From: Ylistrum balloti
Taxonomy: Eukaryota
NCBI RefSeq assembly: GCF_031769215.1
Contig: NW_026781896.1
Span: 930,001-994,000 of the forward strand
Reading direction: 5' to 3'
DNA length: 64,000 nt
Shown here: positions 159 to 37,270 of the stretch, in pieces
How the letters are laid out: every line of letters starts with the position of its first letter
How positions within the stretch are numbered: the stretch's first letter is position 1
Notes under the pieces: model-generated
The model's database searches: none
Told to the model about the DNA's origin: nothing
Seen by the model: the letters and a program-made list of their open reading frames with translations, nothing else
Translations under genes and position numbers: made by a program

Positions 159-2661
159 TTAATTAAGAACATAAATTGGCCACCCAGGATGGCATGTATG
201 TGCGAGAGAAGCACTCATCAGTGCCAGGTCGTCATGTGTCATGGGTGTGCTAGTGGGATTGCTGTCAATCAACTGTATGAGTTTTACCTAGAAATATAAA
301 ACAAAAAGTGTCTTCTTGATCTATTAAACAAAGTTGCCAGTTCGCATCGTGGCCAGTGCCGTTAATTGACCAAGGGAGTTGAAATATCTGACAAAGCCAA
401 ATAGCTGATAGGCACGGATCTGACTTCGGCTGTTGTGTGAGATATCTAAATCAACGTTTAACTTACTATATGTATTCCGAAGGCGTCATAACATTTAACT
501 GCAATATTTCCTAGAGATTTTGGGCTTTTAACGAAGTATTCAGCCATATATTGCCATATCCTAATCAAAGTTATTATTATAATCCACCAAATAGGTATTT
601 TGGCTACCATGCATTGCAATAAGTTTAAATGACAAATTTGTATTGATAAAAACTAGAAGATATTTTCGCAAAACGAAAAAAAATCACTAAAAACAAAAAA
701 GAAGAAAGACTGAAAGAATCGCTAATTTCATGAAATCGGAACTAAAACATTTAACGAACATAAAACATATTAAATCGCCTGAATTATTCACTGATTTGAA
801 AAAGGCATTTATCACTTTTAAAGATGAATATATATATATATATATTTAATTTTGTAAAAAAGGGAGAATCCCTCCATTCACTTGATAAAAATGATCTATG
901 AAAAACTCCAAACAAAAGATTGAAGTTAAGCCTATGACGATCGTTTTCATTCCGTGTAGATAATCTCTGTTCATCTACTAACCTCGAGATTCCTGAGAAC
1001 ATGAATATCTTGGATGTGACTCTTCTCATCATCACTTGGGTTATATATCCAACACTGATGGTTACTGACTATCGCCATACGTTGCTGCAAAACGTCATAC
1101 ACACTGCTAAATGATCCTTCAGCTTATTATATTTTCTTAATGTTGAACACATATCTTATTTTAGATTTCAATACCGATGAGAGGTCACATACAAATAGAA
1201 ATTCAAAAGCAGGATTGTATTAATGTTTTTAAACATCAATATTAGTTTGGGCATTTTGATGGTATTACTCACTGAAATACAAACTGACAATAAGGTCGAA
1301 ATTTTCGCGAATCAACTTTATGTACTGGGATGAAGTGTACTACCGGAACATATTTTATCATAGGGTTTGTATAGAACATAGTTTGTTGAATATTTTGGAA
1401 CAATGTGCCAAATTTGCTGAAATAATATGTCATATTCAACACCTTCGTGACATTACCGAATTAATGTCATACTTGAAGGCAAATCCTTCTCCAATATGTG
1501 GTGCGTGGGTTCCATGATGTCCATGTTGGTGTGTTGTATTATGGTTGTTATGGTTATGTGGTGCCTTAGTTGTTGTCATAGCACATGTCTGAAAAAAATG
1601 GAGTTGAAATACTTTTGTCGGTATTAATGCCAACAACTTTGAGATTTTCGAGTACACGATATGAATTTAGCAACTATTTACTGAAAAATAAATAAAGAAG
1701 ACGCTTTTGTACACTGGATTAAATAAATACAATTTAATATGTCTCATGAATATGAAAACAAGAGACCCATGTGCGTTCACGGTCATCTTACTCTAAAAAC
1801 ATATACATGAAAGGTCCAAAATAGGCCTTAAATAATTTTTTCAACTACTCTACAGCTTAAACAGAAGACATTGTTGGTTAATCATGACATTTTTTGCAAA
1901 CTTAATACCATATTCTTTATACATACAATACATTATTATCATTACTCATGATGCTTAACCATTTCAACACATTTAATTACTGTGACTTTGAAAATGGGTC
2001 AATGTCATTCATATCAACAAAGTTGGTAGGCCTTCATCCTAACATGCTATAGGCCTAATATCCTAATCCTTGACTATTATGTTATTTTGAAGAAGTTATT
2101 CTAAGATTTAAACATATTTGATCCATGTGACCTTTCAGGCGATAAAAGTAATCCTATTAACTAGAGCTTGAATCAACTTTCTGAATTTAAGAAATTATTC
2201 CCCATCCTATATGATGTTTCAGACCTTTGGTTGCAATCCAGCATTAAACATTTTGAGGTTTAATTTTGACTAGCTATCCCATTTGGAGCCCCGTCCACCT
2301 CTAGGTTCCTAGGAGTTAAATCAAGTTTCTGAATTTAAGAAATTATTCTCCACTCTGAATAATGTTTCACACCAAATTTCGTTGAAAATCATTCAAACAT
2401 TAAGTGTTTACGACGCAGTCCTAGCCACCGAGAAAGTGACGCCAGTCTCACTTTTGCGACTCTTCGTCGTATACGAGACAACATTACAAGATATTGATAT
2501 CAATGGAGTGCAAAGAACTAAAAAAAACCACGTTTCCTTGTATTATATTATTTGGAAAAACGGAATTTAAAGAATAATTCTTGTAAATAACTGCAAATAG
2601 TAAAGTTTTAAATACTCACTAAGGCGACCATACAGGCCAGAAGACCAAGTATTCCGTTCAT
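159..2661 (-). CDS. Secreted His-rich BRICHOS-like protein, copy 1 (4 exons, 134 aa, intact)
   Basis: Exons on minus strand: 2661-2620 (MNGILGLLACMVAL, donor gtgagt), 1588-1457 (TCAMTTTKAPHNHNNHNTTHQHGHHGTHAPHIGEGFAFKYDINS, acceptor ttttcag, donor gtaatg), 1084-983 (QRMAIVSNHQCWIYNPSDDEKSHIQDIHVLRNLE, acceptor tttgcag, donor gttagt), 287-159 (VKLIQLIDSNPTSTPMTHDDLALMSASLAHTCHPGWPIYVLN*, acceptor tttctag). All introns are GT-AG and phase 0, giving an open frame with a hydrophobic N-terminus. BRICHOS-likeness is inferred from the motif pattern. Confidence 0.88.
1757..2481 (+). mobile_element. Non-autonomous Helentron/HINE-like element in intron 1 (also 9196-9921, 16638-17361, 24076-24800; truncated at 31531-32098; deleted form inverted in copy 6)
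   Basis: 5' end aacaagagacccatgtgcgttcacggtcatct; internal gtgactttgaaaatgggtcaa palindrome-like motif; two ~150-bp core repeats (aatcaa.tttctgaatttaagaaattatt...gatgtttca..cc); 3' gtctc...gagaca stem. The core resembles the one at 55.6-56.2 kb. Confidence 0.6.
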
Positions 2662-4273
2662 CGTTAGAATGTGATGTTGGACCCAAGCAAGGAAACAAGT
2701 GAATCAAAGAATTGAACTGACCGATGTATTTGTATCTAATGTGTGGGAATGACCTGGATTTTCATTCTTATCTGTAGTGTTGTGATGTCTGTGATCATAC
2801 CATATGGTCAGCATCATGCTAACCCATTTCATTATTTTGTTTCACAATTTCTATGTTTGTTTGATTAATGTAGAAACATGTAGATAGCATCCCTTTCTTT
2901 ATTATCTACTTATACTACACGTATCCTATGTAGGTAGAATATTATATATCCTGTCTAAACTCGTTTTTGTAAAGAATTAAAAACAAAGAAAATACTGACA
3001 ATTTAACAGATTATTTATACAGTGTCGTTTTTACCTGTTTTGAATAAATATAGTGCCTGTTAGATATAAAGTAGCACCGCATCTTCGTCGATGCATATAA
3101 TTATGTTTGTTTCATTTATCATCTCTTCGTCAACATCTTTTTGAAACGACTAGTTGTTATCTTATTGAACAACATACGGGAGGCTCGTTACTTGCCTTTC
3201 AGTGCAACTTCGTAAAGGTGGCTTACCAGCGTACACAACCTTGACTGCACAAACCCACTAGTTTCCCATCCTCCTGAGAAAAAACCAACGCCCAATGATG
3301 TATATTCATCATATCTTACAGGGGAACAATGTTCACATCATTTCACGTATTCCGTTTTTATTTCCAATTATTTGAACAGAAAAAACAATCTTGTCCAAAA
3401 TGTGTTACAATAAGCATGAGTACATATACAAATGTGATTAGAGAGCAGACATGTTACCCAACAGTGTGTGATCTTTTGTTAGCTAAGTCTGAAATCGTGC
3501 CCGTTGAACCTTCTAATTTATCACATTTGCACTCAAATGACCAGGTAAGTTTTCGGTCATTTTGAGATGAAACAGTCTCCATTGTTTCCAATTTCCCATT
3601 GTGAAAGTTATTGCCGGCTCTTTTTCCGCATAGGAAGAGAGAAAAATCTCATTTTTCTCTTGCCGCTTGTTGTTTTATGCGATTGGAGTTTTATTTCAGC
3701 TTACAGAGTAAGATACTAATGCTTCACGCTCTTCTATATCTAAAGCACTCCAATACCTCAAGCATTCCACTTTATCTCATAAGGTCAAATGGTTCATATT
3801 GTAATGATTGTAGTTTCACATATTCGACACTAGGATATGAAGCAATTAGCGGACGGCATTATAGTGTAATCGCTTAGAAATGTCAAAACATTGACACATA
3901 TGCATGACCCAATTTGTCTCATTGATATTCAAATAAGGAATGTTTAAAACACTGATCAACAATTTTTTCATTTGTATAACAGTCTTGTCCAGTCACAGCG
4001 TTATTAATACATTAAAGCACACAGCTACTTATTGATGAAACGTATAAAGACAGCAATGAACTTTCACAGCGTCACTAAAACCAAAATAAATTATCAACAA
4101 TTAATCAAATTGAGGAAAACAGTGACTTGTATGACAGCATTGTCCCGTCACAGCGTTAACACAACGTAAAAGAGAACCACCATATTAATCGAATTGATAA
4201 AAAAACAAGAACACAGGACACATTTTACTTCGAAATCATTAAACCACTACAAAAGTGATTCCTTTCTGACATC

Positions 4274-4366
4274 GGAAATTTCCCCGTCGTCTGTATCTGT
4301 AAAAATATATAACTCTTGAGCTGAAGAGATTGTCAAAATTGAAACAATAATGTTATTTTGACGTCA
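4274..4366. promoter_or_regulatory. Candidate kappaB (GGAAATTTCC) plus CRE (TGACGTCA) pair upstream of the His-rich gene, repeated in each unit
   Basis: GGAAATTTCC at 4274-4283 and TGACGTCA at 4359-4366, ~1.6-1.7 kb upstream of the ATG. Motif match only. Confidence 0.3.
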
Positions 4367-4610
4367 TGATTATTGAAAAGAAAATATTTCTCAAAATGAA
4401 AACTAGCCAGCTAGTCAGTCCTAGAACAAACCAAATATGAAGTGATATTGCTCTGTCTTGGTTAAAAGCGATAAAAGGAAAAATTGTACAGTGTCATGAA
4501 TTGAATATACCTTGTTCCTTGATAAATAAAGTTTAGATGTTTTCCAGTTTGGAGGAAACTGATATTTTATCTTATGAGAACAAAAGATTTCTGTTCGGAT
4601 TAAGAATATA

Positions 4611-6090
4611 TACTAAACAAAAAAAATGAAAGGTAACACTACTTTATTCTGTGATTATTTAATTAACCCCTTCATAAACGCTTACCAATCATGTACGAAT
4701 AAAGTAATTGATCACTTCTGATAAAACTGCAGTCATGGTTCATTATAAAACTTTGCGTTCAGTTGATTTTATTCGACTGTAATGGACGTTGGGGTCAATT
4801 TCAAAGGCAACACCATTAGTAACAGGTATGGCCACTGTTTGCGAAGTAAACAGCATTGCAGCGTCGTCGCATAGAAATCGTAAATCGGCGGATAATTCGA
4901 GGAGAGATGTTGTTCGATTCAAAAATCAAGGCTTGGGCCAGCTCCTACAAGTTTGACGGCTGATTTTGACGTTCTCTCACGCGTCGCCCAAGAACGTCAC
5001 AGACATGCTTAATCGGTGACAAATCAGGTGATTTAGACGGCCAATCTAACATCTGTACGTTATTATGCCACAAGAAAGTTCTGCTGACGCGACTGGTGTG
5101 CGCTGGTGCGTTATCCTGTTGAAAAATGTGGCCAAAGCCATGGCGTCTTAAGAATGGCAGAACCACTGGTCTTAAAATTTCGTCGCGATATCGAATGGCG
5201 GTTAAACTGTCATTTAACACAACAAGCCTGGTACAAGTCCCCCCACAAATACCACCCCAAACCATTACACTTCCGCCGCCAAAGCGGTCTCGTTCTGCGA
5301 CGCAGCAGTTCGCAAAACGCTCCCTTCGTCGTCTCCACACTCTGCGCATTTCGTCACCGTGTTGCAGACAAAACCTGGACTCATCTGAAAACAGAACATT
5401 GTTCCATTATCGTAAGGCCCAACGACGGTGAACACGGGTCCAGTTACGCCGATTATTACGGTGACGTCGCAACAAATTGGGTCCAGTGTAAGGACGCCGC
5501 GTTTTCAATTGGTAGGCCCTCAACCTATTGCGGACTGTTTGGGAGACACACGACGCCCAAACAATGTCTTTGTAGTCTCTACTGCGGTTACGAATCGATT
5601 GCGCAAGTGTATCAATCGTATACCACGGTCATCCCAGGCGGTCTTCTTACGGGATCGGCCGCTTCGAGGACGATCGGATGTTGACCAGTTTGGTTTAAAC
5701 GACTTACCAACTAGCAAATTGTCTTAACACTGCAACCAAAATGCCGTACAAGTCGACGGCGAGACTCCCCAGCCTGTATCATGCCTACAGCCCTTTCTCT
5801 CTCTACTTGTGACAGCCGGGGCATAATGATAAAGTTGATAGATAGCAAGATTCGGTGATTTCTAAGTCCTAAGGAACAGTTGTCAGTTTGAATGTTTATG
5901 AAATTCAAGCGAAGGTACAAGGTAGTCACAGAAAACCTCGTGCAGCTCTTTCGATAATACAGACTTTCACGCTTGAATGATTTTGGTAACCTCCTTCAAT
6001 TTTGTAATATTGCACAAGCGTCATTTTGTTTTCACTCATTTACAGGTATTCGCCAAGGAAACATGTTAACCTTTCTTTTTTTGTTGAGTA
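4611..6090 (-). mobile_element. Tc1/mariner (DD34E) DNA transposon, non-functional, unit 1
   Basis: TA-flanked imperfect TIRs (tactaaacaaaaaaaatgaaagg / cctttctttttttgttgagta). Transposase spans 5824-4816: MPRLSQVERERAVGM (paired-like HTH), FSDESRF, GGGSVMVWG, FQQDNAPAH, WPSKSPDLSPI(K)H. It has two frameshifts, an in-frame TAA before WNNVLFSDE, and a further TAG near 4945. Confidence 0.93.
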
Positions 6091-7140
6091 TATACACACA
6101 CATATAAGCTTGTTGAAATGCATTTTTGCAAATCTTGACAGTGTTGGATTGTTGTGTTATCAAGTGAAGTATTCGTACTGATTTTAGAAGGATTATATCA
6201 CTTTCCCACTTTCCTTTGCGAACCAAACCAGCTTGTTATTTCATGAATTGTGAAAATGACAAAGAGGTTGTTACTCATGAATTGTGAAATTATCTAGTGA
6301 TCATATATTATTCTTCAAATTTATTTATTTTTACCCACAAAAACGACTTCAGACATCAACTTAATATTAATATTCATCTTCAATAGCTTTCGAATGGACA
6401 ATACCAATATCATATTTTCATCACAAGTTCATATTACAAATAATTTGTAAATGACAAAACCATTAACACATGAGCTGTTATCATAAGGAAATGGTCGACC
6501 ACTTCTGATCTATTCTATGCAGAATATTTCTTTTGATTTGTCACTAATGTTACAGAAAAGGCCATCTTTTCTTTCCGGAACACAGGGCTTTGTTTCGTTT
6601 GTTGATGTGTCTATCATTAGGTCTCTTATATCTTATGATTAAGTTTGTCAATTTGGAGAATTTCAGCTTGTTTAAATGACACAATGCAATACGTTTGTGT
6701 ATGTGTATACATCACCCAAATACATTTAAATCGTATAATCTAGTACGTATTTATCCAAAAGGCATGGAGACCCTAATGAGCATAACATCTCAGTTTACTC
6801 GATACTCTAAACATACTCATTAAGACGCAATAGACGCTATATTAACGTCACAAAAAACTGCATTCAGCGTAATATTTTTTAGCGAAACCCCTGAAATAAC
6901 ATCATTGCTAAAAGTTATATATAAATTAAAAATATGAATGTATATTAGTCATAAGAAAGGTGATATGTATAAGCTCAATGAGCAAAGAAAACTGAATTCA
7001 TTTAAAGCACATTATCTTGGTATGGTATTCTTTCCAAGAATGGTTAAAAACTATATAGATATATGATTGTGAGTAATACTGAAGAGTGTTTGGTGGGAAA
7101 ATTAGCCCAAATCAAAGAAGAAACATACCAAAACATGAAA

Positions 7141-7290
7141 ATGATCGAGTTTCGTGTTGGCAACATCTTCGTCGAGATTGGTGGCAAGATTTTCCAACAC
7201 CCTATTGGCATACCAATAGGAATTAACTGTGGTCCTTTGTTGGCCGAGTTGTTTTGTTTTCATACGAGGCGGAATTTATCAAAATTGAAA
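7141..7290 (+). mobile_element. Penelope-like retroelement RT fragment (also at ~14572-14720, 22010-22160, 29459-29610, and inverted at ~36165-36315)
   Basis: NIFVEIGGKIFQHPIGIPIGINCGPLLAELF followed, after a frameshift, by FSYEAEFI resembles the PLE RT segment NIFV.FGG..FQQ.IGIPMGTNCAPLLADLFLYSYEAEF. It is a ~150-bp relic only. Confidence 0.7.
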
Positions 7291-7621
7291 AAGAAGTGGT
7301 CAAAACAGGTTTTTGTTTCTTCGGCAAAATCAGCTTTACTTATTAATTTTATCTTAAACAAGGCATAAAAATTCATGCTTGATCATGAGAACGGTTTCTT
7401 GAATACGGGTCAAGTTCTTGTTATCTTTGTATTATTTCAAGAGTTTCCTTATCATCTGTTTTGTGTTCATACGCTGCCTTCATTAATCGATTGTGTATTT
7501 ACATTATGATATTAAAACAATATACAGAAATTTTCTTATTATTATTAAAAATAAGAACAAAAGAAATTCAGTCATCTTTCAGGAAAATGCATAATTTTAA
7601 TTGGTCTACATTCTTAAGCAT

Positions 7622-10103
7622 TTAATTAAGAACATAAATTGGCCACCCAGGATGGCATGTATGTGCGAGAGAAGAACTCATCAGTGCCAGGTCGTCATGT
7701 GTCATGGGTGTGCTACTGGGATTGCTGTCTATCAACTGGATGAGTTTTACCTAGAAATATAAAACAAAAAGTGTCTTCTTGATCTGTTAAACAAGTGTAA
7801 AAATCGTTCATGATCGCAAGGTTGCCAGTTCGCATCGTGGCCAGTGCCGTTAATTGACCAAGGGAGTTGAAATATCTGACAAAGCCAAATAGCTGATAGG
7901 CACAGATCTAACTTCGGCTATCGTGTGAGATATCTAAATCAGCATTTAACTTACTATATGTATTCCGAAGGCGTCATAACATTTAACTGCAATATTTGCA
8001 AGAGTTTTGGGGGTTTTAACGAAGTATGCGACCATATATTGTCATATCCTAATCAAAATTATTATTATAATCCGCCAAATAGGTATTTTGGCTAGCATGC
8101 ATTACGATCAATTTGAATGACAAATTTGTTTTGAAAAGATATTTTCGCAAAATGAAAAAAAAATCACTAAAAAGAACAAAGACTGAAAGAATCGTTAACT
8201 TCCTGAAACATATGAAATCGCCTGAATTATTCACCGACTTGAAAAAGCCATTTATTATTTTTAAAGATGAAATATATATATATATATAATTTTGCAAAAA
8301 AGAAAGAATCCCTCCCTTCACTTGATCAAAATGATCTATGAAAAACTCCAAACAAAAGATTTAAGTTAAGCCTATGACGATCGCTTTCATTCCGTGTAGA
8401 TAACCTGTTCATCTACTAACCTCGAGATTCCTGAGAACATGAATATCTTGGATGTGACTCTTCTCATCATCACTTGGGTTATATATCCAACACTGATGGT
8501 TACTGACTATCGCCATACGTTGCTGCAAAACGTCATAAACACTGCTAAATGATCTTTCAGCTTATTATATTTTCTTAATGTTGAACACATATTTTATTTT
8601 AGATTTTAATACAGATGAGAGGTCACATACAAATAGAAATTCAAAAGCAGGATTGTATTAATGTTTTTAAACATCAATGTTAGTTTGGGCATTTTGATGG
8701 TATTAGTCACTGAAATACAAACTGACAATAAGGTCGAAATTTTCGCGAATCAACTTTAAGTACTGGGATGAAGTGTACTACCGGAACATATTTTATCATA
8801 AGGGTTTGTATAGAACATAGTTTGTTGAATATTTTGGAACAATGTGCCAAATTTGCTGAAATAAGATGTCATATTCAACACCTTCGTGACATTACCGAAT
8901 TAATGTCATACTTGAAGGCAAATCCTTCTCCAATATGTGGTGCGTGGGTTCCATGATGTCCATGTTGGTGTGTTGTATTATGGTTGTTATGGTTATGTGG
9001 TGCCTTAGTTGTTGTCATAGCACATGTCTGAAAAAAATGGAGTTGAAATACTTTTGTCGGTATTAATGCCAACAACTTTGAGATTTTCGAGTACACGATA
9101 TGAATTTAGCAACTATTTACTGAAAAATAAATAAAGAAGACGCTTTTGTACACTGGATTAAATAAATACAATTTAATATGTCTCATGAATATGAAAACAA
9201 GAGACCCATGTGCGTTCACGGTCATCTTACTCTAAAAACATATACATGAAAGAGCCAAAATAGGCCTTAAATAATTTTTTTCAACTACTCTACAGCTTAA
9301 ACAGAAGACATTGTTGGTTAATCATGACATTTTTTGCAAACTTAATACCATATTCTTTATACATACAATACATAATTATCATTACTCATGATGCTTAACC
9401 ATTTCAACACATTTAATAACTGTGACTTTGAAAATGGGTCAATGTCATTCATATCAACAAAGTTGGTAGGCCTTCATCCTAACATGCTATAGGCCTAATA
9501 TCCTAATCCTTGACTATTATGTTATTTTGAAGAAGTTATTCTAAGATTTAAACATATTTGATCCCTGTGACCTTTCAGGCGATAAAAGTAATCCTATTAA
9601 CTAGAGCTTGAATCAACTTTCTGAATTTAAGAAATTATTCCCCATCCTATATGATGTTTCAGACTTTTGGTTGCAATCCAGCATTAAACATTTTGAGGTT
9701 TAATATTGACTAGCTATCCCATTTGGAGCCCCGTCCACCTCTAGGTTCCTAGGAGTCAAATCAAGTTTCTGAATTTAAGAAATTATTCTCCACTCTGAAT
9801 AATGTTTCACACCAAAGTTCGTTGAAAATCATTCAAACATTAAGTGTTTACGAAGCAGTCCTAGCCACCGAGAAAGTGACGCCAGTCTCACTTTTGCGAC
9901 TCTTCGTCGTATACGAGACAACATTACAAGATATTGATATCAATGGAGTGCAAAGAACTTAAAAAAAAACTACGTTTCCTTGTATTATATTATTTAGAAA
10001 AACGGAATTTAAAGAATAATTCTTGTAAATAACTGCAAATAGTAAAGTTTTAAATACTCACTAAGGCGACCATACAGGCCAGAAGACCAAGTATTCCGTT
10101 CAT
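7622..10103 (-). CDS. Secreted His-rich BRICHOS-like protein, copy 2 (intact)
   Basis: Exons 10103-10062, 9027-8896, 8522-8421, 7750-7622, with the same splice sites as copy 1. Exon 4 reads SNPSSTP...MSSSLAHTC (T>S and A>S versus copy 1). Confidence 0.88.
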
Positions 10104-13533: not shown

Positions 13534-15052
13534 TATACACACACATATAAGCTTGTTGAAATGCATTTTTGCAAATCTTGACAGTGTTGGATTGTTGTGT
13601 TATCAAGTGAAGTATTCGTACTGATTTTAGAAGGATTATATCACTTTCCCACTTTCCTTTGCTTGTTATTTCATGAATTGTGAAAATGACAAAGAGGTTG
13701 TTACTCATGAATTGTGAAATTATCTAGTGATCATATATTATTCTTCAAATTTATTTATTTTTACCCACAAAAACGACTTCAGACATCAACTTAATATTAA
13801 TATTCATCTTCAATAGCTTTCGAATGGACAATACCAATATCATATTTTCATCACAAGTTCATATTACAAATAATTTGTAAATGACAAAACCATTAACACA
13901 TGAGCTGTTATCATAAGGAAATGGTCGAACACTTCTGATCTATTCTATGCAGAATATTTCTTTTGATTTGTCACTAATGTTACAGAAAAGGCCATCTTTT
14001 CTTTCCGGAACACAGGGCTTTGTTTCGTTTGTTGATGTGTCTATCATTAGGTCTCTTATATCTTATGATTAAGTTTGTCAATTTGGAGAATTTCAGCTTG
14101 TTTAAATGACACAATGCAATACGTTTGTGTATGTGTATACATCACCAAAATACATTTAAATCGTATAATCTAGTACGTATTTATCAAAAAGGCATGGAGA
14201 CCCTAATGAGCATAACATCTCAGTTTACTCGATACTCTAAACATACTCATTAAGACGCAATAGACGCTATATTAACGTCACAAAAACTGCATTCAGCGCA
14301 ATATGTTTTCATTGAAAACCCCTGAAATAACATCATCGCTAAAATTTATATATAAATTAAAAACATGAATGTGTATTAGTCATAAGAAAGGTGATATATT
14401 TAAACTCGATGAGCAACGAAAACTAAATTGATTTAAAGCACATTATCTTGGTATGGTATTCTTTCCAAGAATGGTTAAAGACGATATAGATATATGATTG
14501 TGAGTAATACTGAAGAGTGTTTGGTGGGAAAATTAGCCCAAATCAAAGAAGAAACATACCAAAACATGAAAATGATCGAGTTTCGTGTTGGCAACATCTT
14601 CGTCGAGATTGGTGGCAAGATTTTCCAACACCCTATTGGCATACCAATAGGAATTAACTGTGGTCCTTTGTTGGCCGAGTTGTTTTGTTTTCATACGAGG
14701 CGGAATTTATCAAAATTGAAAAAGAAGTGGTCAAAACAGGTTTTTGTTTCTTCGGCAAAATCAGCTTTACTTATTAATTTTATCTTAAACAAGGCATACA
14801 AATTCATGCTTGATCATGAGAACGGTTTCTTGAATACGGGTCAAGTTCTTGTTATCTTTGTATTATTTCAAGAGTTTCCTTATCATCTGTTTTGTGTTCA
14901 TACGCTGCCTTCATTAATCGATTGTGTATTTACATTATGATATTAAAACAATATACAGAAATTTTCTTATTATTATTAAAAATAAGAACAAAAGAAATTC
15001 AGTCATCTTTCAGGAAAATGCATAATTTTAATTGGTCTACATTCTTAAGCAT

Positions 15053-26930: not shown

Positions 26931-28411
26931 TACTAAACAAAAAAAAATGAAAGGTAACACTACTTTATTCTGTGATTATTTAATTAACCCCTTCATAAAC
27001 GCTTACCAATCATGTACGAATAAAGTAATTGATCACTTCTGATAAAACTGCAGTCATGGTTCATTATAAAACTTTGCGTTCAGTTGATTTTATTCGACTG
27101 TAATGGACGTTGGGGTCAATTTCAAAGGCAACACCATTAGTAACAGGTATGGCCACCGTTTGCGAAGTAAACAGCATTGCAGCGTCGTCGCATAGAAATC
27201 GTAAATCGGCGGATAATTCGAGGAGAGATGTTGTTCGATTCAAAAATCAAGGCTTGGGCCAGCTCCTGCAAGTTTGACTGTTGATTTTGACGTTCTCTCA
27301 CGCGTCGCCCAAGAACGTCACAGACATGCTCAATCGGTGACAAATCAGGTGATTTAGACGGCCAATCTAACATCTGTACGTTATTATGCCACAAGAAAGT
27401 TCTGCTGACGCGACTGGTGTGCGCTGGTGCGTTATCCTGTTGAAAAATGTGGCCAACGCCATGGCGTCTTAAGAATGGCAGAACCACTGGTCTTAAAATT
27501 TCGTCGCGATATCGAATGGCGGTTAAACTGTCATTTAACACAACAAGCCTGGTACAAGTCCCCCCACAAATACCACCCCAAACCATTACACTTCCGCCGC
27601 CAAAGCGGTCCCGTTCTGCGACGCAGCAGTTCGCAAAACGCTCCCTTCGTCGTCTCCACACTCTGCACATTTCGTCACCGTGTTGCAGACAAAACCTGGA
27701 CTCATCTGAAAACAGAACATTGTTCCATTATCGTAAGGCCCAACGACGGTGAACACGGGTCCAGTTACGCCGATTATTACGGTGACGTCGCAACAAATTG
27801 GGTCCAGTGTAAGGACGCCGCGTTTTCAATTGGTAGGCCCTCAACCTATTGCGGACTGTTTGGGAGACACACGACGCCCAAACAATGTCTTTGTAGTCTC
27901 TACTGCGGTTACGAATCGATTGCGCAAGTGTATCAATCGTATACCACGGTCATCCCAGGCGGTCTTCTTACGGGATCGGCCGCTTCGAGGACGATCGGAT
28001 GTTGACCAGTTTGGTTTAAACGACTTACCAACTAGCAAATTGTCTTAACACTGCAACCAAAATGCCGTACAAGTCGACGGCGAGACTCCCCAGCCTGTAT
28101 CATGCCTACAGCCCTTTCTCTCTCTACTTGTGACAGCCGGGGCATAATGATAAAGTTGATAGATAGCAAGATTCGGTGATTTCTAAGTCCTAAGGAACAG
28201 TTGTCAGTTTGAATGTTTATGAAATTCAAGCGAAGGTACAAGTTAGTCACAGAAAACCTCGTGCAGCTCTTTCGATAATACAGACTTTCACGCTTGAATG
28301 ATTTTGGTAACCTCCTTCAATTTTGTAATATTGCACAAGCGTCATTTTGTTTTCACTCATTTACAGGTATTCGCCAAGGAAACATGTTAACCTTTCTTTT
28401 TTTGTTGAGTA
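26931..28411 (-). mobile_element. Tc1/mariner transposon, non-functional, unit 4
   Basis: Same element and flanks; retains the catalytic Glu (SPIEH) but shares the N-terminal frameshifts and TAA. Confidence 0.93.
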
Positions 28412-29930
28412 TATACACACACATATAAGCTTGTTGAAATGCATTTTTGCAAATCTTGACAGTGTTGGATTGTTGTGTTATCAAGTGAAGTATTCGTACT
28501 GATTTTAGAAGGATTATATCACTTTCCCACTTTCCTTTGCGAACCAAACCAGCTTGTTATTTCATGAATTGTGAAAATGACAAAGAGGTTGTTACTCATG
28601 AATTGTGAAATTATCTAGTGATCATATATTATTCTTCAAATTTATTTATTTTTACCCACAAAAACGACTTCAGACATCAACTTAATTTTAATATTCATCT
28701 TCAATAGCTTTCGAATGGACAATACCAATATCATATTTTCATCACAAGTTCATATTACAAATAATTTGTAAATGACAAAACCGTCCACACATGAGCTATT
28801 ATCATAAGGAAATGGTCGACCACTTCTGATCTATTCTATGCAGAATATTTCTTTTGATTTGTCACTAATGTTACAGAAAAGGCCATCTTTTCTTTCCGGA
28901 ACACAGGGCTTTGTTTCGTTTGTTGATGTGTCTATCATTAGGTCTCTTATATCTTATGATTAAGTTTGCCATTTTGAGAATTTCAGCTTGTTTAAATGAC
29001 ACAATGCAATACGTTTGTGTATGTATATACATCACCCAAATACATTTAAATCGTATAATCTAGTACGTATTTATCCAAAAGGCATGGAGACCCTAATGAG
29101 CATAACATCACAGTTTACTCGATACTCTAAACATACTCATTAAGACGCAATAGACGCTATATTAACGTCACAAAAAACTGCATTCAGCGTAATATTTTTT
29201 AGTGAAACCCCTGAAAAAACATCATTGCTAAAAGTTATATTAAATTAAAAATATGAATGTATATTAGTCATAACAAATGTGTTATGTATAAGCTCAATGA
29301 GCAAAAAAACTAAATTGATTTAAAGCACATTATCTTGGTATGGTATTCTTTCCAAGAATGGTTAAAAACTATATAGATATATGATTGTGAATAATACTGA
29401 AGAGTGTTTGGTGGGAAAATTAGCCCAAATCAAAGAAGAAACATACCAAAACATGAAAATGATCGAGTTTCGTGTTGGCAACATCTTCGTCGAGATTGGT
29501 GGCAAGATTTTCCAACACCCTATTGGCATACCAATAGGAATTAACTGTGGTCCTTTGTTGGCCGAGTTGTTTTGTTTTCATACGAGGCGGAATTTATCAA
29601 AATTGAAAAAGAAGTGGTAAAAACAGGTTTTTGTTTCTTCGGCAAAATCAGCTTTATTTATCTTAAACAAGGCATAAAAATTCATGCTTGATCATGAGAA
29701 CGGTTTCTAGAATACGGGTCAAGTTCTTGTTATCTTTGTATTATTTCAAGAGTTTCCTTATCATCTGTTTTGTGTTCATACGTTGCCTTCATTAATCGAT
29801 TGTGTATTTACATTATGATATTAAAACAATATACAGAAATTTTCTCATTATTATTAAAAATAAGAACAAAAGAAATTCAGTCATCTTTCAGGAAAATGCA
29901 TAATTTTAATTGGTCTACATTCTTAAGCAT

Positions 29931-31362
29931 TTAATTAAGAACATAAATTTGCCACCCAGGATGGCATGTATGTGCGAGAGAAGAACTCATCAGTGCCAGG
30001 TCGTCATGTGTCATGGGTGTGCTACTGGGATTGCTGTCTATCAACTGGATGAGTTTTACCTAGAAATATAAAACAAAAAGTGTCTTCTTGATCTGTTAAA
30101 CAAGTGTAAAAATCGTTCATGATCGCAAGGTTGTCGGTTACCATCGTGGCCAATGCCGTTAAATGACCAAGGGAGTTGAAATATCTGACAAAGCCAAATA
30201 GCTGATAGGCACGGATTTGACTTCGGCTGTCGTGTGAGATATCTAAATCAGCATTTAACTTACTATATGTATTCTGAAGGCGTCATAACATTTAACTTCA
30301 ATATTTGTAAGAGTTTTGGGGGTTTTAACGAAGTATGCGACCATATATTGTCATATCCTAATCAAAATTATTATTATAATCCACCAAATAGGTACTTTGG
30401 CTAGCATGCATTACGATCAATTTGAATGACAAATTTGTATTCAAAAGATATTTTCGCAAAATGAAAAAAAAATCACTAAAAAGAACAAAGACTGAAAGAA
30501 TCGTTAACTTCCTGAAACAGGAACTGAGACAATTAACGAATATAAACATATGAAATCGCCTGAATTATTCACTGACTTGAAAAAGTCATTCATTATTTTT
30601 AAAGATGAAAAAAATATATATATAATTTTGCAAAAAAGAAAGAATCCCTCCCTTCACTTGATCAAAATGATCTATGAAAAACTCCAAACAAAAGATTGAA
30701 GTTAAGCCTATGACGATCGTTTTCATTCCGTGTAGATAACCTGTTCATCTACTAACCTCGAGATTCCTGAGAACATGAATATCTTGGATGTGACTCTTCT
30801 CATCATCACTTGGGTTATATATCCAACACTGATGGTTACTGACTATCGCCATACGTTGCTGCAAAACGTCATCAACACTGCTAAATGATCTTTCAGCTTA
30901 TTATATTTTCTTAATGTTGAACACATATTTTATTTTAGATTTCAATATAGATGAGAGGTCACATACAAATAGAAATTCAAAAGCAGGATTGTATTAATGT
31001 TTTTAAACATCAATATTAGTTTGGGCATTTTGATGGTATTAGTCACTGAAATACAAACTGACAATAAGGTCGAAATTTTCGCGAATCAACTTTAAGTACT
31101 GGGATGAAGTATACTACATGAACATATTTTATCATAGTGTCTGTATAGAACATAGTTTGTTGAATATTTTAGATCAATGTGCTAAATTTGCTTAAATGAG
31201 ATGTCATATTCAACACTTTCGTGACATTACCGATATAATGTCATACTTGAAGGTAAATCCTTCTCCAATATGTGGTGCGTGGGTTCCATGATGTCCATGT
31301 TGGTGTGTTGTATTATGGTTGTTATGGTTATGTGGTGCCTTAGTTGTTGTCATAGCACATGT
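29931..31362 (-). pseudogene. His-rich BRICHOS-like gene, copy 5, 5'-truncated (exons 2-4 only)
   Basis: Exons 31362-31231 (…GEGFTFKYDIIS), 30858-30757 and 30059-29931 (…GWQIYVLN*) are open. Homology to the unit stops at ~32098 inside intron 1, so exon 1 (start codon and most of the signal peptide) and the promoter are absent. Confidence 0.8.
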
Positions 31363-32115
31363 CTGAAAAAAATGGAGTTGAAATACTTTTGTCGGTGTTA
31401 ATGCCAACAACTTTGAGATTTTCGAGTACACGATTTGAATTTAGCAACTATTTACTGAAAAATAAATAAAGAAGACGCTTTTGTACACTGGATTAAATAA
31501 ATACAGTTTAATATGTCTCATGAATATGAAAACAAGAGACCCATGTGCGTTCACGGTCATCTCACTCTAAAAACATATACATGATAGGGCCAAAATAGGC
31601 CTTAAATAACTTTTTCAACTACTCTACAGCTTAAACAGAAGACAATGTTGGTTAATCATGACATTTTTTGCAAACTTAATACCATATTCTTTATACATAC
31701 AATACATAATTATCATTACTCATGATGCTTAACCATTTCAACACATTTAATAACTGTGACTTTGAAAATGGGTCAATGTCATTCATATCAACAAAGTCGG
31801 TAGGCCTTCATCCTAACATGCTATAGGCCTAATATCCTAATCCTTGACTATTATGTTATTTTGAAGAAGTTATTCTAAGATTTAAACATATCTTATCCCT
31901 GTGAACTTTCAGGCGATAAAAGTAATCCTATTAACTAGAGCTTGAATCAACTTTCTGAATTTAAGAAATAATTCCCCATCCTATATGATGTTGCAGACCA
32001 AATTTGGTTGCAATCCAGCATTAAGCATTTTGAAGTTAAATATTGAATAGCTATCCCATTTGGGGCCCGGTCCACCTCTAGGTTCCTAGGAGTCAAATGA
32101 ATTTTCTGAAAACTG

Positions 32116-35100
32116 AAGACTGTTATACACAAATGAAAAACTTGTTTTTCAGTGCTTTAAACATTCCTTATTTGAATATTAATGTAACAAATGTGGTCAT
32201 GCATATGTGTCAATGTTTGACATTTCTGAGTGATTACACTATAATGGCGTCCACTAATTGCTTCATATCCTAGTGTTGAATATGTGAAACTACAATCATT
32301 ACAATATGAACCATTTGACCTTATGAGATAAAGTGGAATGCTTGAGGTATTGGAGTGCTTTAGATATAGAAGAGCGTGAAGCATTAGTATTTTACTCTGT
32401 AAGCTGAAATAAAACTCCAATCGCATAAAACAACAAGCGGCAAGAGAAAAATGAGATTTTTCTCTCTTCCTATGCTGATAAAGAGCCGGCAATAACTTTC
32501 ACAATGGGAAATTATAAACAAAGCAGACTGTTTCATCTCAAAATGACCGAAAAATTACCTGGTCACTTGAGTGCAAATGTGATAAACTAGAAGGGTCACA
32601 GGAGACTTAACTAACAAAAGGTCATACAGTGTTAGGTAACATGTATGCTCTCTAATCACATTTGTATATGTATTCATGCTGATTGGCACACATTTAGGAC
32701 AAGGTTGTATTTTCTGTTCAAACAAATTTGAAATAAAAAAGGAGCTCGTGAAATGATGTAAACATTCTTCCCCTATTAGATGTAATGAATATACATCATT
32801 GGGCGTTGGGGTTTCTCAGGAGGATGGGAAACGAGTCGGTTTGTGCAGTGAAGGTTGTGTACACTGGTAAGCCACTTTTACGAAGTTACCCTGAATGACA
32901 AGTGACGAGCCTCCCGTATGTTGTTCAATGTGATATCAACTAGCCGTTTCAAAAAGCTGTTTAGGAGGTGATGATAAATGAAACAAACATACTTTCATGA
33001 GTTACGAGAGTATCTTTAATGCTAAAAATCGTTTTCTTGTGTTCATGCTTCCACTGATATGCAATTCACTGACAATGGTATGCATCGACTAAGATGCGGT
33101 GCTACTTTATATCTAACAGGCACTATATTTATTCAAAACAGGTAAAAACGACACTGTATAAATAATCTGTTAAATTGTCAGTATTTTCTTTGTTTTTACT
33201 TCTGTATAATTACGAGTTTAGATAGGATATATTATATTCTACCTACATAGGATAAGTGTAGTATAAATAGATAATAAAGAAAGGATGCTATCTACTTGGT
33301 TCTACATTAATCAAACAAACATAGAAATTGTGAAACAAAATAATGAAATGGGTTAGCATGATGCTGACCATATGGTATAATCTCAGACATCACAACACTA
33401 CAGATAAGAATGAAAATCCAGGTCATTCCCACACATTAGATACAAATACATCGGTTAGTTCAATTCTTTGATTCACTTGTTTCCTTGCTTGGGTCCAACA
33501 TCACATTCTAACGATGAACGGATTACTTGGTCTTCTGGCCTGTATGGTCGCCTTAGTGAGTATTTACTATTTGCAGTTATTTACAAGAATTTTATTCTTT
33601 AAATCCCGTTTTTCTAACATTAATATAATACAAGGAAGTTTTTTTTAGTTCTTTGCACTCCATTGATATAAATCTCTTGCCATTTTGTCTCGTATACGAC
33701 GAAGAGTCGCAAAAGTGGGACTGACGTCACTTTTTCGGTGGCTAGGGCTTCGCCGTTAAAACTTAATGTTTGAATGATTTTCAACGAAATTTGGTGTGCA
33801 ACATTATTCAGAGTGGAGAATAATTTCTTAAATTCAGAAACTTGATTTGACTCCTGGAAACCTAGAAGTGGTCTGAAACATCATATAGGATGGGGAATCA
33901 TTTCTTAAATTCAGAAAGTTGATTCAAGCTCTGGTTAATAGGATTACTTTTATCGCTTGAAAGGTCACAGCTATCAAATCTGTTTAAATCTTAGAATAAT
34001 TCTTCACAATTATATAATATAAATTGTATGTATAAAGAATATGGTATTAAATTTGCAGAAAATGTCATGATTAACCAACAATGTCTTCTGTTTAAGCTTT
34101 ACGATAGTTAAAAAAATATTTAATGCCTTCTTTGGCCCTTTCATGTATATGTTTTTAGTGAGATGACCGTGAACGCACATGAGTCTCTTGTTTTCATATT
34201 CATGAGACATATCAAACTGTATTTATTTAATCCGGTGTACAAAGCGTCTTCTTTATTTATTTTTCATTAAATAGTTGCTAAATTCATATCGTGTACTCGA
34301 AAACCTCACAGTTGTTAGCATTAACACCGACAAAAGTATTTCAACTCCATTTTTTTTTCAGACATGTGCTATGACAACAACTAAGGCACCACATAACCAT
34401 AACAACCATAATACAACACACCAACATGGACATCATGGAACCCACGGAACCCACGCACCACATATTGGAGAAGGATTTACCTTCAAGTATGACATCAATT
34501 CGGTAATGTCACAAAGGTGTTGAATATGACATCTTATTTCAGCAAATTTGTCACATTGTTCCAAAATATTCAACAAACTATGTTCTATACAAACCCTATG
34601 ATAAAATATGTTCCGGTAGTACACTTCATCCCAGTACTTAAAGTTGATTCGCGAAAATTTCGACCTTATTGTCAGTTTGTATTTCAGTGAGTAATACCAT
34701 CAAAATGCCTTAACTAATATTGATGTTTAAAAACATTAATACAATCCTGCTTTTGAATTTCTATTTGTATGTGACCTCTCATCTGTATTGAAATCTAAAA
34801 TAAAATATGTGTTCAACATTAAGAAAATATAATAAGCTGAAGGATCATTTAGCAGTGTTTATGACGTTTTGCAGCAACGTATGGCGATAGTCAGTAACCA
34901 TCAGTGTTGGATATATAACCCAAGTGATGATGAGAAGAGTCACATCCAAGATATTCATGTTCTCAGGAATCTCGAGGTTAGTAGATGAACAAGTTATCTA
35001 TACGGAATGAAAACGATCGTCATAGGCTTAACTTCAATCTTTTGTTTGGAGTTTTTCATAGATCATTTTTATCAAGTGAAGGGAGGGGTTCTCTCTTTTT

Positions 35101-37270
35101 TTACAGAAGTTTATATATATATTTTATCATCTTTAAAAATAATTAATGCCTTTTTCAAGTCAGTGAATAATTCAGACGATTTAATATGTTTTATGTTCGT
35201 TAAATGTCTTAGTTCCTATTTCATGAAATTATTGATTCTTTCAGTCTTTGTTCTTTTTTTTTTTTGTTTTTAGTGATTTTTTTCGTTTTGCGAAAATATC
35301 TTCCAGTTTTTATCAATACAAATTTTTCATTCAAACTGATTGTAATGCATGCTAGCCAAAATACCTATTTGGTGGATTATAATAATAACTTTGATTAGGA
35401 TATGGCAATATATGGCTGAATACTTCGTTAAAAGCCCAAAAACCTCTAGCAAATATTGCAGTTAAATGTTATGACGCCTTCGGAATACATATAGTAAGTT
35501 AAACGTTGATTTAGATATCTCACACAACAGCCGAAGTCAGATCCGTGCCTATCAGCTATTTGGCTTTGCCAGATATTTCAACTCCCTTGGTCAATTAACG
35601 GCACTGGCCACGATGCGAACTGGCAACCTTGCGATCATGAACGATTTTTACACTTGTTTAACAGATCCAGAAGACACTTTTTGTTTTATATTTCTAGGTA
35701 AAACTCATCCAGTTGATAGACAGCAATCCCACTAGCACACCCATGACACATGACGACCTGGCACTGATGAGTGCTTCTCTCGCACATACATGCCATCCTG
35801 GGTGGCAAATTTATGTTCTTAATTAAATGCTTAAGAATGTAGACCAATTAAAATTATGCATTTTCCTGAAAGATGACTGGATTTCTTTTGTATTCATTTT
35901 GAATAATGATGAGAAAATTTCTGTAAATTGTTTTAATATCATATTGTAAATACACAATCGATTAATAAAGGCAGCGTATGAACACAAAACAGATGATAAG
36001 GAAACTCTTGAAACATACAAGGATAGCAAGACCTGGACCCGTATTCAAGAAACCGTTCTCATGCTCAAGCATGAATTTTGTGCTCAAGCCTGATGTCTTG
36101 TTTAAGTTAAAATTAATCCATAAAGCTGATTTTGCCGAAGGAAAAAACTGTTTTGACCATTTCTTTTTCAATTTTGATAAATTCTGCCTCGTATGAAAAC
36201 AAAACACCTCGGCCCACAGAGGTCCACAATTTATTCCTATTGGTATGCCAATAGGGTGTTGGAAAATCTTGCCACCAATCTCGACGAAGATGTTGCCAAC
36301 ACGAACCTCGGTCATTTTCTTGTTTTGGTATGTTTCTTCTTTGATTTGAACTTATTTTCCCACCAAACACCCTTCAGTATTATTCACAATCATATATCTA
36401 TATCGTCTTTCACCATTCTTTGAAAGAATACCATATAAGATATTGTGCTTTAAATTAATTCACAGTTTTGTTTGCTCATTGAGTTTAAATATATCACCTT
36501 TCTTATGACTAATACACATTCATAGTTTTAATTTATATATAAATTTTAGCGATGATGTTATTTCAGGGGATTTCAATGAGAAAATATTGCGCTGAATGCA
36601 GTTTTTTGTGACGTTAATATAACGTCTGTTGCATCATAATGAGTGTGTTTAGCATATTACATATTAGCGTATTGCATTATGTCATTTAAACATACTGAAA
36701 TTCTCCAATTTTACAAACAAACTTAATCATAAGATGTATAAGACCTAATCATTGACACATTAACAAAAGAAACAAGCCCTGTGTTCCGGAAAGAAGAGTT
36801 GGCCTTTCTGTAACATTAGTGACAAATCAAATGAAATATTCTGCATAGAAAAGAACAGAAGTGGTCGACCATTTCCAAATGATAATAGCTCATGTGTGGA
36901 CGGTTTTGTCAGTTACAAATTATTTGTAAAATGAACTTGTGATGAAAATATGATATTGGTATTGTCCATTCGAAAGCTATTGAAGATGGATATTGATATT
37001 AAGTTGATGTCTGAAGTCGTTTATGAGGGTACAAATAAATAAATTTGACGAATAATATATGATCACTAGATAATTTCACAATTCATGAGTAACAACCTCT
37101 TTGTCATTTTCACAATTCATGAAATAACAAGCTGGTTTGGTTCGCGGAGGAAAGTGGGAAAGTGATATAATCCTTCTAAAATCAGTACGAATACTTCACT
37201 TGATAACACAACAATCCAACACTGTCAAGATTTGCAAAAATACATTTCAACAAGCTTATATGTGTGTATA
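32116..37270 (+). repeat. Inverted, more diverged partial copy of the unit (gene plus flanks, no Tc1)
   Basis: Reverse complement aligns to unit positions ~6091-11420, from the Tc1 right flank to ~1.3 kb upstream of the ATG. It has more indels than the tandem units have among themselves. Confidence 0.95.
33514..35826 (+). CDS. Secreted His-rich BRICHOS-like protein, copy 6 (inverted, 137 aa, intact)
   Basis: Exons 33514-33555 (MNGLLGLLACMVAL), 34362-34502 (carries a 9-nt duplication giving GHHGTHGTHAPH), 34875-34976 and 35698-35826, with GT-AG sites conserved. AATAAA at 35964-35969. Confidence 0.88.

What the first reader, a model, noticed from the sequence alone, without database searches (positions are those of the whole stretch)
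159..35826. Amplified family of secreted His-rich, BRICHOS-like mini-proteins hidden from the ORF track
Seen in sequence: four phase-0 exons splice into a 134-aa protein with a signal peptide (probable cleavage after TCA), a tract with 9 His in 21 residues (HNHNNHNTTHQHGHHGTHAPH), and a ~90-aa domain reading FKYD...RMAI....CWI ... helix ... LAHTCHPGWPIYVL. Five copies are intact. Established: BRICHOS domains have a vhDf..g.ia....CyI start, two Cys about 55-65 residues apart and a C....Y.l end; in proSP-C, BRI2 and annelid arenicin/alvinellacin precursors they chaperone an aggregation-prone or antimicrobial peptide located C-terminally. Inference: here the order is reversed (His-rich segment N-terminal, domain ending the protein), which suggests a dosage-amplified metal-binding (Zn/Cu), mucus/adhesive or histatin-like defence system.
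Basis: partly seen in the sequence, partly recalled or inferred. Interest (0 to 1): 0.85.

Follow-up and report, generated by a model that had tools for sequence, protein, structure and literature searches.

The report
Scallop array of His-rich BRICHOS-fold genes
A saucer scallop carries a young tandem array of a small four-exon gene for a secreted protein with a histidine-rich tail and a divergent BRICHOS-type domain, belonging to an unstudied family found across bivalves whose function is still unknown.

Summary
Window 159-35826 contains six copies of one four-exon gene with GT-AG, phase-0 introns. Five are intact (134 or 137 aa). One has lost exon 1 at an inversion breakpoint.

The window is Ylistrum balloti contig JAUZWB010000184.1. 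RefSeq already models these genes as "uncharacterized protein"; three of its entries are letter-identical to copies 2-4.

The protein has a signal peptide, a disordered tail of about 28 residues that is 32% His, and a 90-residue domain. Relatives with the same layout occur in scallops, oysters, mussels, clams and a freshwater mussel.

The BRICHOS reading is supported by fold, not by Pfam:
- Two AlphaFold models are confident over the domain.
- Their best solved match, also in a search independent of Foldseek, is proSP-C BRICHOS (2YAD; Z 6.2-7.1; TM 0.57/0.64).
- Predicted SP-C and gastrokine-2 models match at TM 0.69-0.73.
- The Asp and two-Cys signature is present.
- UniProt names two oyster homologues "BRICHOS domain-containing protein".
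- PF04089 matched no member.

The layout is unusual for BRICHOS: no C-terminal client region and no transmembrane client. The metal-binding and histatin-like ideas are untested, and no dibasic processing site separates tail from domain. Oyster transcript contigs confirm the conserved splice pattern. The scan held no earlier finding on this locus.

The parts
159..2661 (-). Copy c1, intact gene, 134 aa. Exons 2661-2620, 1588-1457, 1084-983, 287-159 (stop 161-159).
   Evidence: ATG, three GT-AG introns, all phase 0. ATTAAA at 144-139, about 15 nt after the stop, is a possible poly(A) signal (read; inference).
7622..10103 (-). Copy c2, intact gene, 134 aa. Exons 10103-10062, 9027-8896, 8522-8421, 7750-7622.
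   Evidence: The protein is identical to P0008, a RefSeq Ylistrum balloti protein.
15053..17541 (-). Copy c3, intact gene, 134 aa. Exons 17541-17500, 16469-16338, 15965-15864, 15181-15053.
   Evidence: The CDS is identical to c2 and c4, while the introns differ by 0.5-1.0%.
22491..24980 (-). Copy c4, intact gene, 134 aa. Exons 24980-24939, 23907-23776, 23403-23302, 22619-22491.
29931..32110 (-). Copy c5, 5'-truncated. Exons 2-4 only (31362-31231, 30858-30757, 30059-29931). The true exon 1, which carries the signal peptide, is missing.
   Evidence: No exon 1 hit. The unit ends at 32110 inside intron 1. RefSeq model P0012 begins it with a 10-residue first exon (tblastn hit, 12 of its residues aligned at 92% identity, 32028-31993). 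That exon lies in intron 1 sequence and gives no signal peptide.
33514..35826 (+). Copy c6, intact inverted gene, 137 aa (one extra GTH in the tail). Exons 33514-33555, 34362-34502, 34875-34976, 35698-35826.
   Evidence: It lies in an older inverted segment, 32116-37274, that is 91-93% identical to the direct units.
159..29930 (.). Four complete head-to-tail units of about 7.44 kb: 159-7621, 7622-15052, 15053-22490, 22491-29930. They are 97.2-99.4% identical to unit 3.
   Evidence: Each unit holds the 2.5-kb gene plus about 5 kb of spacer with a Tc1/mariner-type DDE remnant.
32110..32116 (.). Inversion junction between truncated c5 and the upstream region of inverted c6. The two genes lie head to head.
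   Evidence: the direct-unit match ends at 32110 and the inverted match starts at 32116.

Best explanation
These are real, annotated but unstudied genes of the scallop Ylistrum balloti. Each encodes a small secretory protein with three parts: a cleavable signal peptide (about 17 residues, probably cut after T-C-A), a disordered N-terminal tail of about 28 residues rich in His and Thr, and a compact 90-residue domain that ends the protein.

The domain has the BRICHOS fold: a central beta-sheet with one helix on each side. An Asp closes the first strand, and one Cys in the sheet pairs with one at the end of helix 2. It is a very divergent member of the BRICHOS superfamily.

The protein belongs to a bivalve-wide family that usually sits in tandem clusters. 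In Y. balloti one paralogue was recently amplified as a 7.44-kb unit. That gives four full copies, one truncated copy and an older inverted copy in the window, with two more paralogues just beyond its left edge.

Inferred, not shown: by analogy with other BRICHOS domains it acts outside the cell as a binding or holdase module. The His-rich tail would give it a charge switch near pH 6 and/or binding of Zn, Cu or Ni. The amplification would raise dosage.
For: Gene models:
- Canonical splice sites and phase-0 exons in all copies.
- The RefSeq protein P0008 is identical to c2-c4.
- The oyster homologue has the same exon pattern (42/123/102/126 nt). Contigs L006 and L003, assembled from public sequencing runs, carry its ORF uninterrupted across all three introns of the genomic loci L004/L005, so it is transcribed and spliced as modelled.

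Selection:
- dN/dS is 0.21 overall and 0.13 in the domain against the older paralogue P0014.
- CDS divergence is 3-4 times lower than intron divergence in every copy pair.

Family:
- 31 aligned members from Pectinida, Ostreida, Mytilida, Venerida and Unionida share the same layout.
- F52, Y54, C69 and E92 are invariant. C124 is invariant among complete domains.
- The tail is 20-44% His in 29 of 30 members.

Fold:
- The AF2 full-length model has block-mean pLDDT of 82-94 from about residue 50 to the end and below 50 over most of residues 1-44.
- The domain-only model from 30 sequences has pLDDT 84 and pTM 0.70.
- The five best Foldseek PDB hits are all 2YAD proSP-C BRICHOS chains, with TMq 0.57, TMt 0.64 and probability 0.95.
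- VIA-align gives Z 7.1 with rmsd 2.5 A over 69 of 79 residues.
- 2YAD is again first (Z 6.2) in a Foldseek-independent search of 48,161 chains.
- ESM Atlas shape search gives the SP-C cluster at TM 0.73 (82 aa, 2.1 A) and the gastrokine-2 cluster at 0.69/0.58; the next unrelated family scores 0.43.
- Most of the top Swiss-Prot AlphaFold hits are BRICHOS proteins: BRICD5, arenicin, SP-C, LECT1, GKN1/2, ITM2B/C.
- Language-model neighbours with a family name are BRICHOS or OAF clusters.

Topology and signature match the published definition in PMC10182729 and PMC9627735: strand between helix 1 and helix 2, Cys in the sheet plus Cys at the end of helix 2, and the Asp.

UniProt names two oyster family members 'BRICHOS domain-containing protein'.
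Against: - Pfam PF04089 gives no hit, even at E up to 10, for any member.
- The family profile finds no BRICHOS chain among PDB sequences.
- Every Foldseek E-value against BRICHOS is above 0.05, and Z 6-7 lies in the range the tool warns can be a common arrangement.
- I could not run a profile-profile comparison with a BRICHOS alignment. I also could not inspect a residue-level superposition, so the Asp and Cys equivalence rests on aligned ranges and spacing.
- The signal peptide was judged by eye (no SignalP).
- No expression data for Y. balloti itself were seen.
- Everything about metal binding, pH switching and chaperoning is inference.
- Young copies differ mostly by non-synonymous changes (5 of 6 between c3 and c6; dN/dS 0.6-1.3 on very few sites). 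Constraint on the newest copies is therefore not demonstrated.
Confidence: 0.72

Rival explanations
1. Precursor of a histatin-like antimicrobial peptide. The His-rich tail is cut off and acts as a cationic or metal-dependent antimicrobial peptide. The BRICHOS-type domain serves as its pro-domain chaperone, in the reverse order to arenicin and alvinellacin.
For: BRICHOS pro-domains accompany antimicrobial peptides in polychaetes (PMC9756803). Arenicin and preproalvinellacin models are among the structural hits. His-richness of the tail is kept across bivalves. Tandem amplification is common for immune effectors (general knowledge).
Against: No dibasic or furin-type site, and no other conserved basic pair, lies between tail and domain in any of 31 members. 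The tail has one Lys and no hydrophobic or amphipathic stretch. In known BRICHOS antimicrobial precursors the peptide is C-terminal and Cys-rich. No expression or infection data are available.
Confidence: 0.12
2. Not a BRICHOS homologue. It is a bivalve-specific alpha/beta domain that converged on a similar small sheet-plus-two-helices arrangement.
For: Pfam and PDB sequence-profile searches are negative. Foldseek E-values are 0.08-0.9. An unrelated bacterial DUF1488 structure (2gpi) scores Z 5.0, close to the BRICHOS hits.
Against: Hits span the BRICHOS superfamily in four independent libraries, while nothing else reaches TM 0.5 both ways. The Asp and two-Cys signature has the published spacing and secondary-structure placement (PMC2751770, PMC10182729). 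The secretory context is the same. UniProt's automatic name for oyster members agrees.
Confidence: 0.12
3. The array is an assembly artefact or a set of decaying pseudogene copies. Only one or two loci are functional.
For: Units are 97-99.4% identical. c2-c4 have identical CDS. One copy is truncated. Recent copies show dN/dS near 1 on few sites.
Against: Units differ from each other by 0.5-3.7% in introns, with indels, so they are distinct sequences. All five full copies keep ORF, splice sites and start codon. Exons are 3-4 times less diverged than introns. Similar multi-copy clusters occur in Argopecten and oysters.
Confidence: 0.04

Closest known systems
proSP-C BRICHOS domain (PDB 2YAD; Pfam PF04089)
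   Same: It is the best structural match (Z 6.2-7.1; TM 0.57/0.64). Both have a central sheet with two flanking helices, an Asp at the end of the first strand, a Cys in the sheet bonded to a Cys at the end of helix 2, and a domain that ends the protein about 8-10 residues after the second Cys. Neither has a C-terminal region.
   Different: Sequence identity is 12-19% and Pfam gives no match. proSP-C is a type II membrane protein whose client is its own poly-Val transmembrane helix; here there is only a short cleavable signal peptide. proSP-C's loop between the helices is long and disordered; here it is short and forms a strand, as in most other BRICHOS domains (PMC10182729). proSP-C has no His-rich tail.
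Gastrokines GKN1/GKN2 (secreted BRICHOS proteins of vertebrate stomach mucosa)
   Same: Both have a signal peptide, are small secreted proteins and carry a single BRICHOS domain. They are the top named language-model neighbours (0.85-0.87) and match at TM 0.69/0.58.
   Different: Gastrokines keep a C-terminal region after the domain and have no His-rich linker. Pfam recognises them. Nothing indicates orthology.
BRICHOS antimicrobial-peptide precursors of polychaetes (arenicin, alvinellacin, nicomicin, capitellacin)
   Same: They are lophotrochozoan secreted precursors with a BRICHOS domain, and they appear among the structural hits.
   Different: Their peptide is C-terminal, Cys-rich and released at a processing site. 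Here nothing follows the domain and no processing site is seen.
His-rich metal- and pH-responsive segments (histidine-rich glycoprotein GHHPH repeats, histatins)
   Same: The composition is similar: HGHH, GTH and HxH runs, with 20-44% His over 17-37 residues.
   Different: This is resemblance in composition only (from my own knowledge of those proteins). There is no homology, no ATCUN motif (the first His is at mature position 5-8), and no test of binding.

Membership tests
BRICHOS superfamily | Match to the curated sequence model (Pfam PF04089) above its gathering score | tested here: not met
   hmmscan at E up to 10 gave no BRICHOS hit on exon pieces, on the 31 aligned family members or on 6 further oyster and scallop entries. 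SMART and PROSITE models could not be run. UniProt names two oyster members 'BRICHOS domain-containing protein'.
BRICHOS superfamily | Fold: central beta-sheet flanked by helix 1 and helix 2, usually with a strand between the helices (PMC10182729) | tested here: met
   The AF2 models give E-E-E-h-H-E-H-E. 2YAD is the top hit by Foldseek, by VIA-align and in the Foldseek-independent search. SP-C and GKN2 predicted models match at TM 0.69-0.73. All of this rests on predicted structure.
BRICHOS superfamily | Two conserved Cys forming a disulfide between the central sheet and helix 2 | tested here: met
   C69 lies in strand 68-72 and C124 directly follows helix 118-123. Both are invariant in complete domains and are the only Cys of the mature scallop protein. 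Their spacing is 55, against 59 in ITM2A (PMC2751770). The bond itself was not observed.
BRICHOS superfamily | Conserved Asp (D105 of proSP-C) about 16 residues before the first Cys | tested here: met
   D55 ends strand 1, 14 residues before C69. It is Asp in most scallop, oyster and mussel members and in the unionid, and Glu in the venerid clams and two oyster members. Glu is a rare but recorded variant (PMC9627735). The VIA alignment starts at model residue 46 against chain residue 96, which puts D55 opposite D105. No residue-level superposition was seen.
BRICHOS superfamily | Four-region architecture: hydrophobic segment, linker, BRICHOS domain, C-terminal beta-prone client region | tested here: not met
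   The protein stops 10 residues after the second Cys, at the domain's last strand. proSP-C is described as the only family without the C-terminal region (PMC10182729). Unlike proSP-C, there is no transmembrane client here.
BRICHOS superfamily | Anti-amyloid or holdase chaperone activity | not testable with these tools
   This needs recombinant protein and aggregation assays.
Histatin-like / BRICHOS-linked antimicrobial peptide precursor | A peptide released at a conserved processing site | tested here: not met
   No dibasic or furin-type motif lies between tail and domain in 31 members.
His-rich metal-binding proteins | Demonstrated Zn, Cu or Ni binding, or a defined motif (ATCUN, HExxH) | tested here: inconclusive
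   Composition only: 9 His in 28 residues, conserved as a composition across bivalves. No ATCUN or HExxH motif is present. Binding is not testable here.

The most novel reading that the evidence does not exclude
A stand-alone, 'client-less' secreted BRICHOS. On this reading, bivalves evolved and repeatedly amplified a BRICHOS domain whose only appendage is a His-rich tail. The result would be an extracellular chaperone or binder switched by pH or by Zn/Cu, or a metal-dependent defence protein. It would be a second exception to the BRICHOS architecture rule, besides proSP-C, and the first with a non-hydrophobic partner segment.
Probability: 0.2. Interest if true: 0.7.

Novelty: new variant of a known kind. 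Interest (0 to 1): 0.45.

Why it matters
BRICHOS domains are studied as anti-amyloid chaperones. The field's working rule is that each one guards an aggregation-prone segment of its own precursor.

This bivalve-wide, often multi-copy family has the fold and signature residues but no such segment. It has a conserved His-rich tail instead. It would therefore test whether BRICHOS can act on clients in trans, or has functions unrelated to amyloid control.

The family also shows that the Pfam BRICHOS model misses it across bivalves. For bivalve biology, a conserved, abundant small secreted His-rich protein is a candidate player in metal handling, mucus or defence. That remains to be shown.

Tried and rejected
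- Pfam on single exons and on full-length homologues found nothing relevant.
- phmmer and hmmsearch against PDB sequences with exon pieces, a full-length homologue and two family profiles returned only chance or His-tag-like hits.
- Eight full-text literature searches were run: BRICHOS with scallop or bivalve terms, histidine-rich with scallop, BRICHOS with histidine-rich, BRICHOS defining residues, gene and UniProt identifiers, run accessions, and peptide strings. None found a paper on this family.
- The scan's earlier notes held nothing near this locus or on BRICHOS.
- The spliced scallop protein has no reference. I did not type it in. I reached it through a 42-aa exon-4 search, which returned full-length homologues and then the identical RefSeq protein P0008. 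That used the only exhaustive HMMER job, so no exhaustive profile search of the family was possible.
- A profile-profile (hhalign) test against a BRICHOS alignment was not done, because no BRICHOS sequences could be fetched by reference.
- I looked for further copies in 36-64 kb and found none.
- I considered the signal peptide as a type II anchor, as in proSP-C, and rejected it. The hydrophobic stretch is only about 14-16 residues and is followed by a small-residue T-C-A or G/A/S cleavage motif that is conserved across the family.
Full report
**What is in the sequence**

The window is AT-rich animal DNA (about 35% G+C).

I read copy 1 base by base and mapped its exons back onto the window. 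This gives a four-exon gene:
- Exon 1 is 42 nt and starts with ATG. It encodes 14 mostly hydrophobic residues.
- Exon 2 is 132 nt. It encodes T-C-A, then the His-rich tract, then the start of the domain.
- Exon 3 is 102 nt.
- Exon 4 is 129 nt including the stop.

All introns are GT...AG and all are in phase 0. Copies c1-c4 give 134 aa. The inverted copy c6 gives 137 aa because of one extra G-T-H.

Copy c5 has exons 2-4 but no exon 1. RefSeq's model for it (P0012) starts with a 10-residue first exon that maps to a short stretch of intron 1 sequence, and the product has no signal peptide. 'Five intact copies' is therefore correct.

**Array structure**

A unit-against-window comparison shows:
- Four complete 7.44-kb units: 159-7621, 7622-15052, 15053-22490 and 22491-29930. 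They are 97.2-99.4% identical to unit 3.
- A fifth unit cut at 32110, inside intron 1.
- From 32116, an inverted and older segment (91-93% identity) that carries c6 head to head with c5.

Each unit holds the 2.5-kb gene and about 5 kb of spacer. The spacer includes a Tc1/mariner-type DDE remnant.

**Source and annotation**

The window's first 1,824 bases match, at 100% identity, the end of locus L001, taken from Ylistrum balloti contig JAUZWB010000184.1 of assembly GCA_031769215.1. P0008 carries three RefSeq accessions and is named 'uncharacterized protein'. It is identical to c2-c4.

Two further paralogues, P0007 and P0014, lie on the same strand just beyond the window's left edge. The cluster therefore has eight loci, seven of them intact.

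**Are these real genes?**

The older paralogue pair c3/P0014 has dN/dS of 0.21 overall and 0.13 in the domain. In every copy pair the CDS is 3-4 times less diverged than the introns; for c3 against c6 the figures are 1.5% and 6.2%.

The few differences among the young copies are mostly non-synonymous. Constraint on the newest copies is therefore not shown.

A profile search found the family in many bivalves: scallops (Pecten, Mizuhopecten, Argopecten), oysters (Ostrea, Saccostrea, Crassostrea/Magallana), Mytilus, Mercenaria, Ruditapes and the unionid Potamilus. All are named 'uncharacterized' by NCBI.

In oysters, two contigs assembled from public sequencing runs (L006, L003) carry the 130-aa ORF uninterrupted. 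The genomic loci (L004, L005) split that ORF by three introns into 42/123/102/126 nt. This is the same exon pattern as in the scallop, so the splice pattern is confirmed at RNA level in a homologue. I saw no RNA data for Y. balloti itself.

A tree places all window copies and P0007 in a species-specific clade. The amplification therefore happened in the Ylistrum lineage. Near-identical multi-copy sets also exist in Argopecten and oysters.

**Protein anatomy**

In the 31-sequence alignment the signal-peptide region ends in a small-residue motif, followed by a conserved M-T-T start.

The tail is 17-37 residues long and 20-44% His in 29 of 30 members. It often ends in T-H-E-P.

The domain follows. 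F52, Y54, C69 and E92 are invariant, C124 is invariant in complete domains, and D55 is Glu in the venerid clams and two oyster members. The mature scallop protein has only two Cys. No dibasic site separates tail and domain.

**Is the domain BRICHOS?**

Sequence models say no. PF04089 gave no hit at E up to 10 for any member. The family profiles found no BRICHOS chain among PDB sequences.

Structure prediction says yes:
- The full-length model (9 sequences) has block-mean pLDDT of 82-94 from about residue 50 to the end and below 50 over most of residues 1-44.
- The domain-only model (30 sequences) has pLDDT 84 and pTM 0.70. Its topology is strand-strand-strand, short helix, long helix 1, strand, helix 2, strand.
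[quoted passage not shown] - VIA-align gives Z 7.1 with rmsd 2.5 A over 69 of 79 residues. The alignment runs from model residues 46-133 to chain residues 96-197.
- In a search of 48,161 chains that does not depend on Foldseek, 2YAD is again first at Z 6.2. The next hit is an unrelated DUF1488 protein at Z 5.0.
- In the ESM Atlas, three unnamed mollusc clusters match best. Then come an SP-C cluster (TM 0.73, 82 residues, 2.1 A) and a gastrokine-2 cluster (0.69/0.58). The next family reaches only 0.43.
- Most of the top Swiss-Prot AlphaFold hits are BRICHOS proteins of seven different families.
- Among fold clusters, the eight best hits are uncharacterised Mytilus and Mizuhopecten proteins (E 3e-8 to 1e-4). 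This points to a larger bivalve expansion of the domain.
- Language-model neighbours with a family name are BRICHOS or OAF. OAF was itself recently recognised as BRICHOS-containing (PMC10182729).

The published definition reads as follows. Secondary structure is conserved and sequence conservation is very low. Only one Asp and two Cys are conserved. The disulfide links helix 2 to the sheet, and most families have a strand between the helices (PMC9627735, PMC2751770, PMC10182729). The models and the alignment fit all of these points.

UniProt also names two oyster members (P0056, P0057) 'BRICHOS domain-containing protein', while near-identical entries stay 'uncharacterized'. That is what a borderline match to some non-Pfam signature would look like. 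I could not see which signature it was.

My conclusion is that this is a divergent BRICHOS-fold domain, very probably homologous. That rests on predicted structure and signature residues, not on a significant sequence-profile score.

**How it differs from known BRICHOS proteins**

[quoted passage not shown] In this family nothing follows the domain, the hydrophobic segment is a short cleavable signal peptide, and the linker is a conserved His-rich tail. No self-client is apparent.

**Function**

Nothing here tests function. The most likely reading is an inference. The protein would be a secreted binder or holdase of BRICHOS type. Its tail would either become cationic below about pH 6 or chelate Zn, Cu or Ni.

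A released histatin-like peptide is less likely, because no processing site is conserved. I found no paper on this family.

**Verdict**

The functional ideas remain open.

The genes are already annotated, and oyster relatives already carry an automatic BRICHOS name. The new points are the family's range, its unusual architecture and the young Ylistrum array.

Noticed in passing
window 4945-5349 (-), with equivalent positions in the other three full units: Each 7.44-kb unit carries a Tc1/mariner-type transposase remnant (Pfam DDE_3, E 3.8e-9) in the spacer between gene copies. The transposon fragment was amplified along with the gene.
   Followed up: partly
window 31993-32028 (-); the same sequence lies in intron 1 of copy 1 near 2220-2250: The RefSeq model for truncated copy c5 (P0012, LOC132552253) borrows a short stretch of intron 1 as its first exon. 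The product has no signal peptide. This is probably an annotation artefact on a pseudogene.
   Followed up: partly
window 39836-40486 (-): A 216-aa ORF has two BIR (inhibitor of apoptosis) domain stretches (Pfam BIR, E 6.8e-23). It is probably an exon of an IAP-family gene downstream of the array.
   Followed up: no
window 44300-44885 and 47353-51925: A dense block of minisatellites with periods of 30, 28, 24, 49 and 61 nt, 80-100% matching. The 28/24/49-nt series occurs twice (47.3-49.5 kb and 49.7-51.2 kb). Strand composition skew is strong (GC skew down to -0.45).
   Followed up: partly
window 58796-63494 (-): Long ORFs that look retroelement-derived: 166-aa and 376-aa ORFs without a Pfam hit, and a 221-aa ORF with a CCHC zinc knuckle (E 2e-5).
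   Followed up: no
L003:110-2166 (oyster transcript contig); UniProt K1QF57 (P0039) and K1Q0Q3 (P0053): In oysters one transcript contig joins the upstream thioesterase-like gene (4HBT_2, faint) to this gene. Two old UniProt models are fusions: thioesterase-like plus this gene, and two tandem copies joined. These are read-through transcription or mis-assembly or mis-annotation.
   Followed up: no
Searches (AlphaFold DB fold clusters; three unnamed mollusc clusters of 62-118 members): Several other uncharacterised Mytilus and Mizuhopecten proteins of 109-195 aa share this domain model at E 3e-8 to 1e-4 with only 18-34% identity. Bivalves seem to hold a wider expansion of divergent BRICHOS-fold proteins with no telling name in these libraries.
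   Followed up: no
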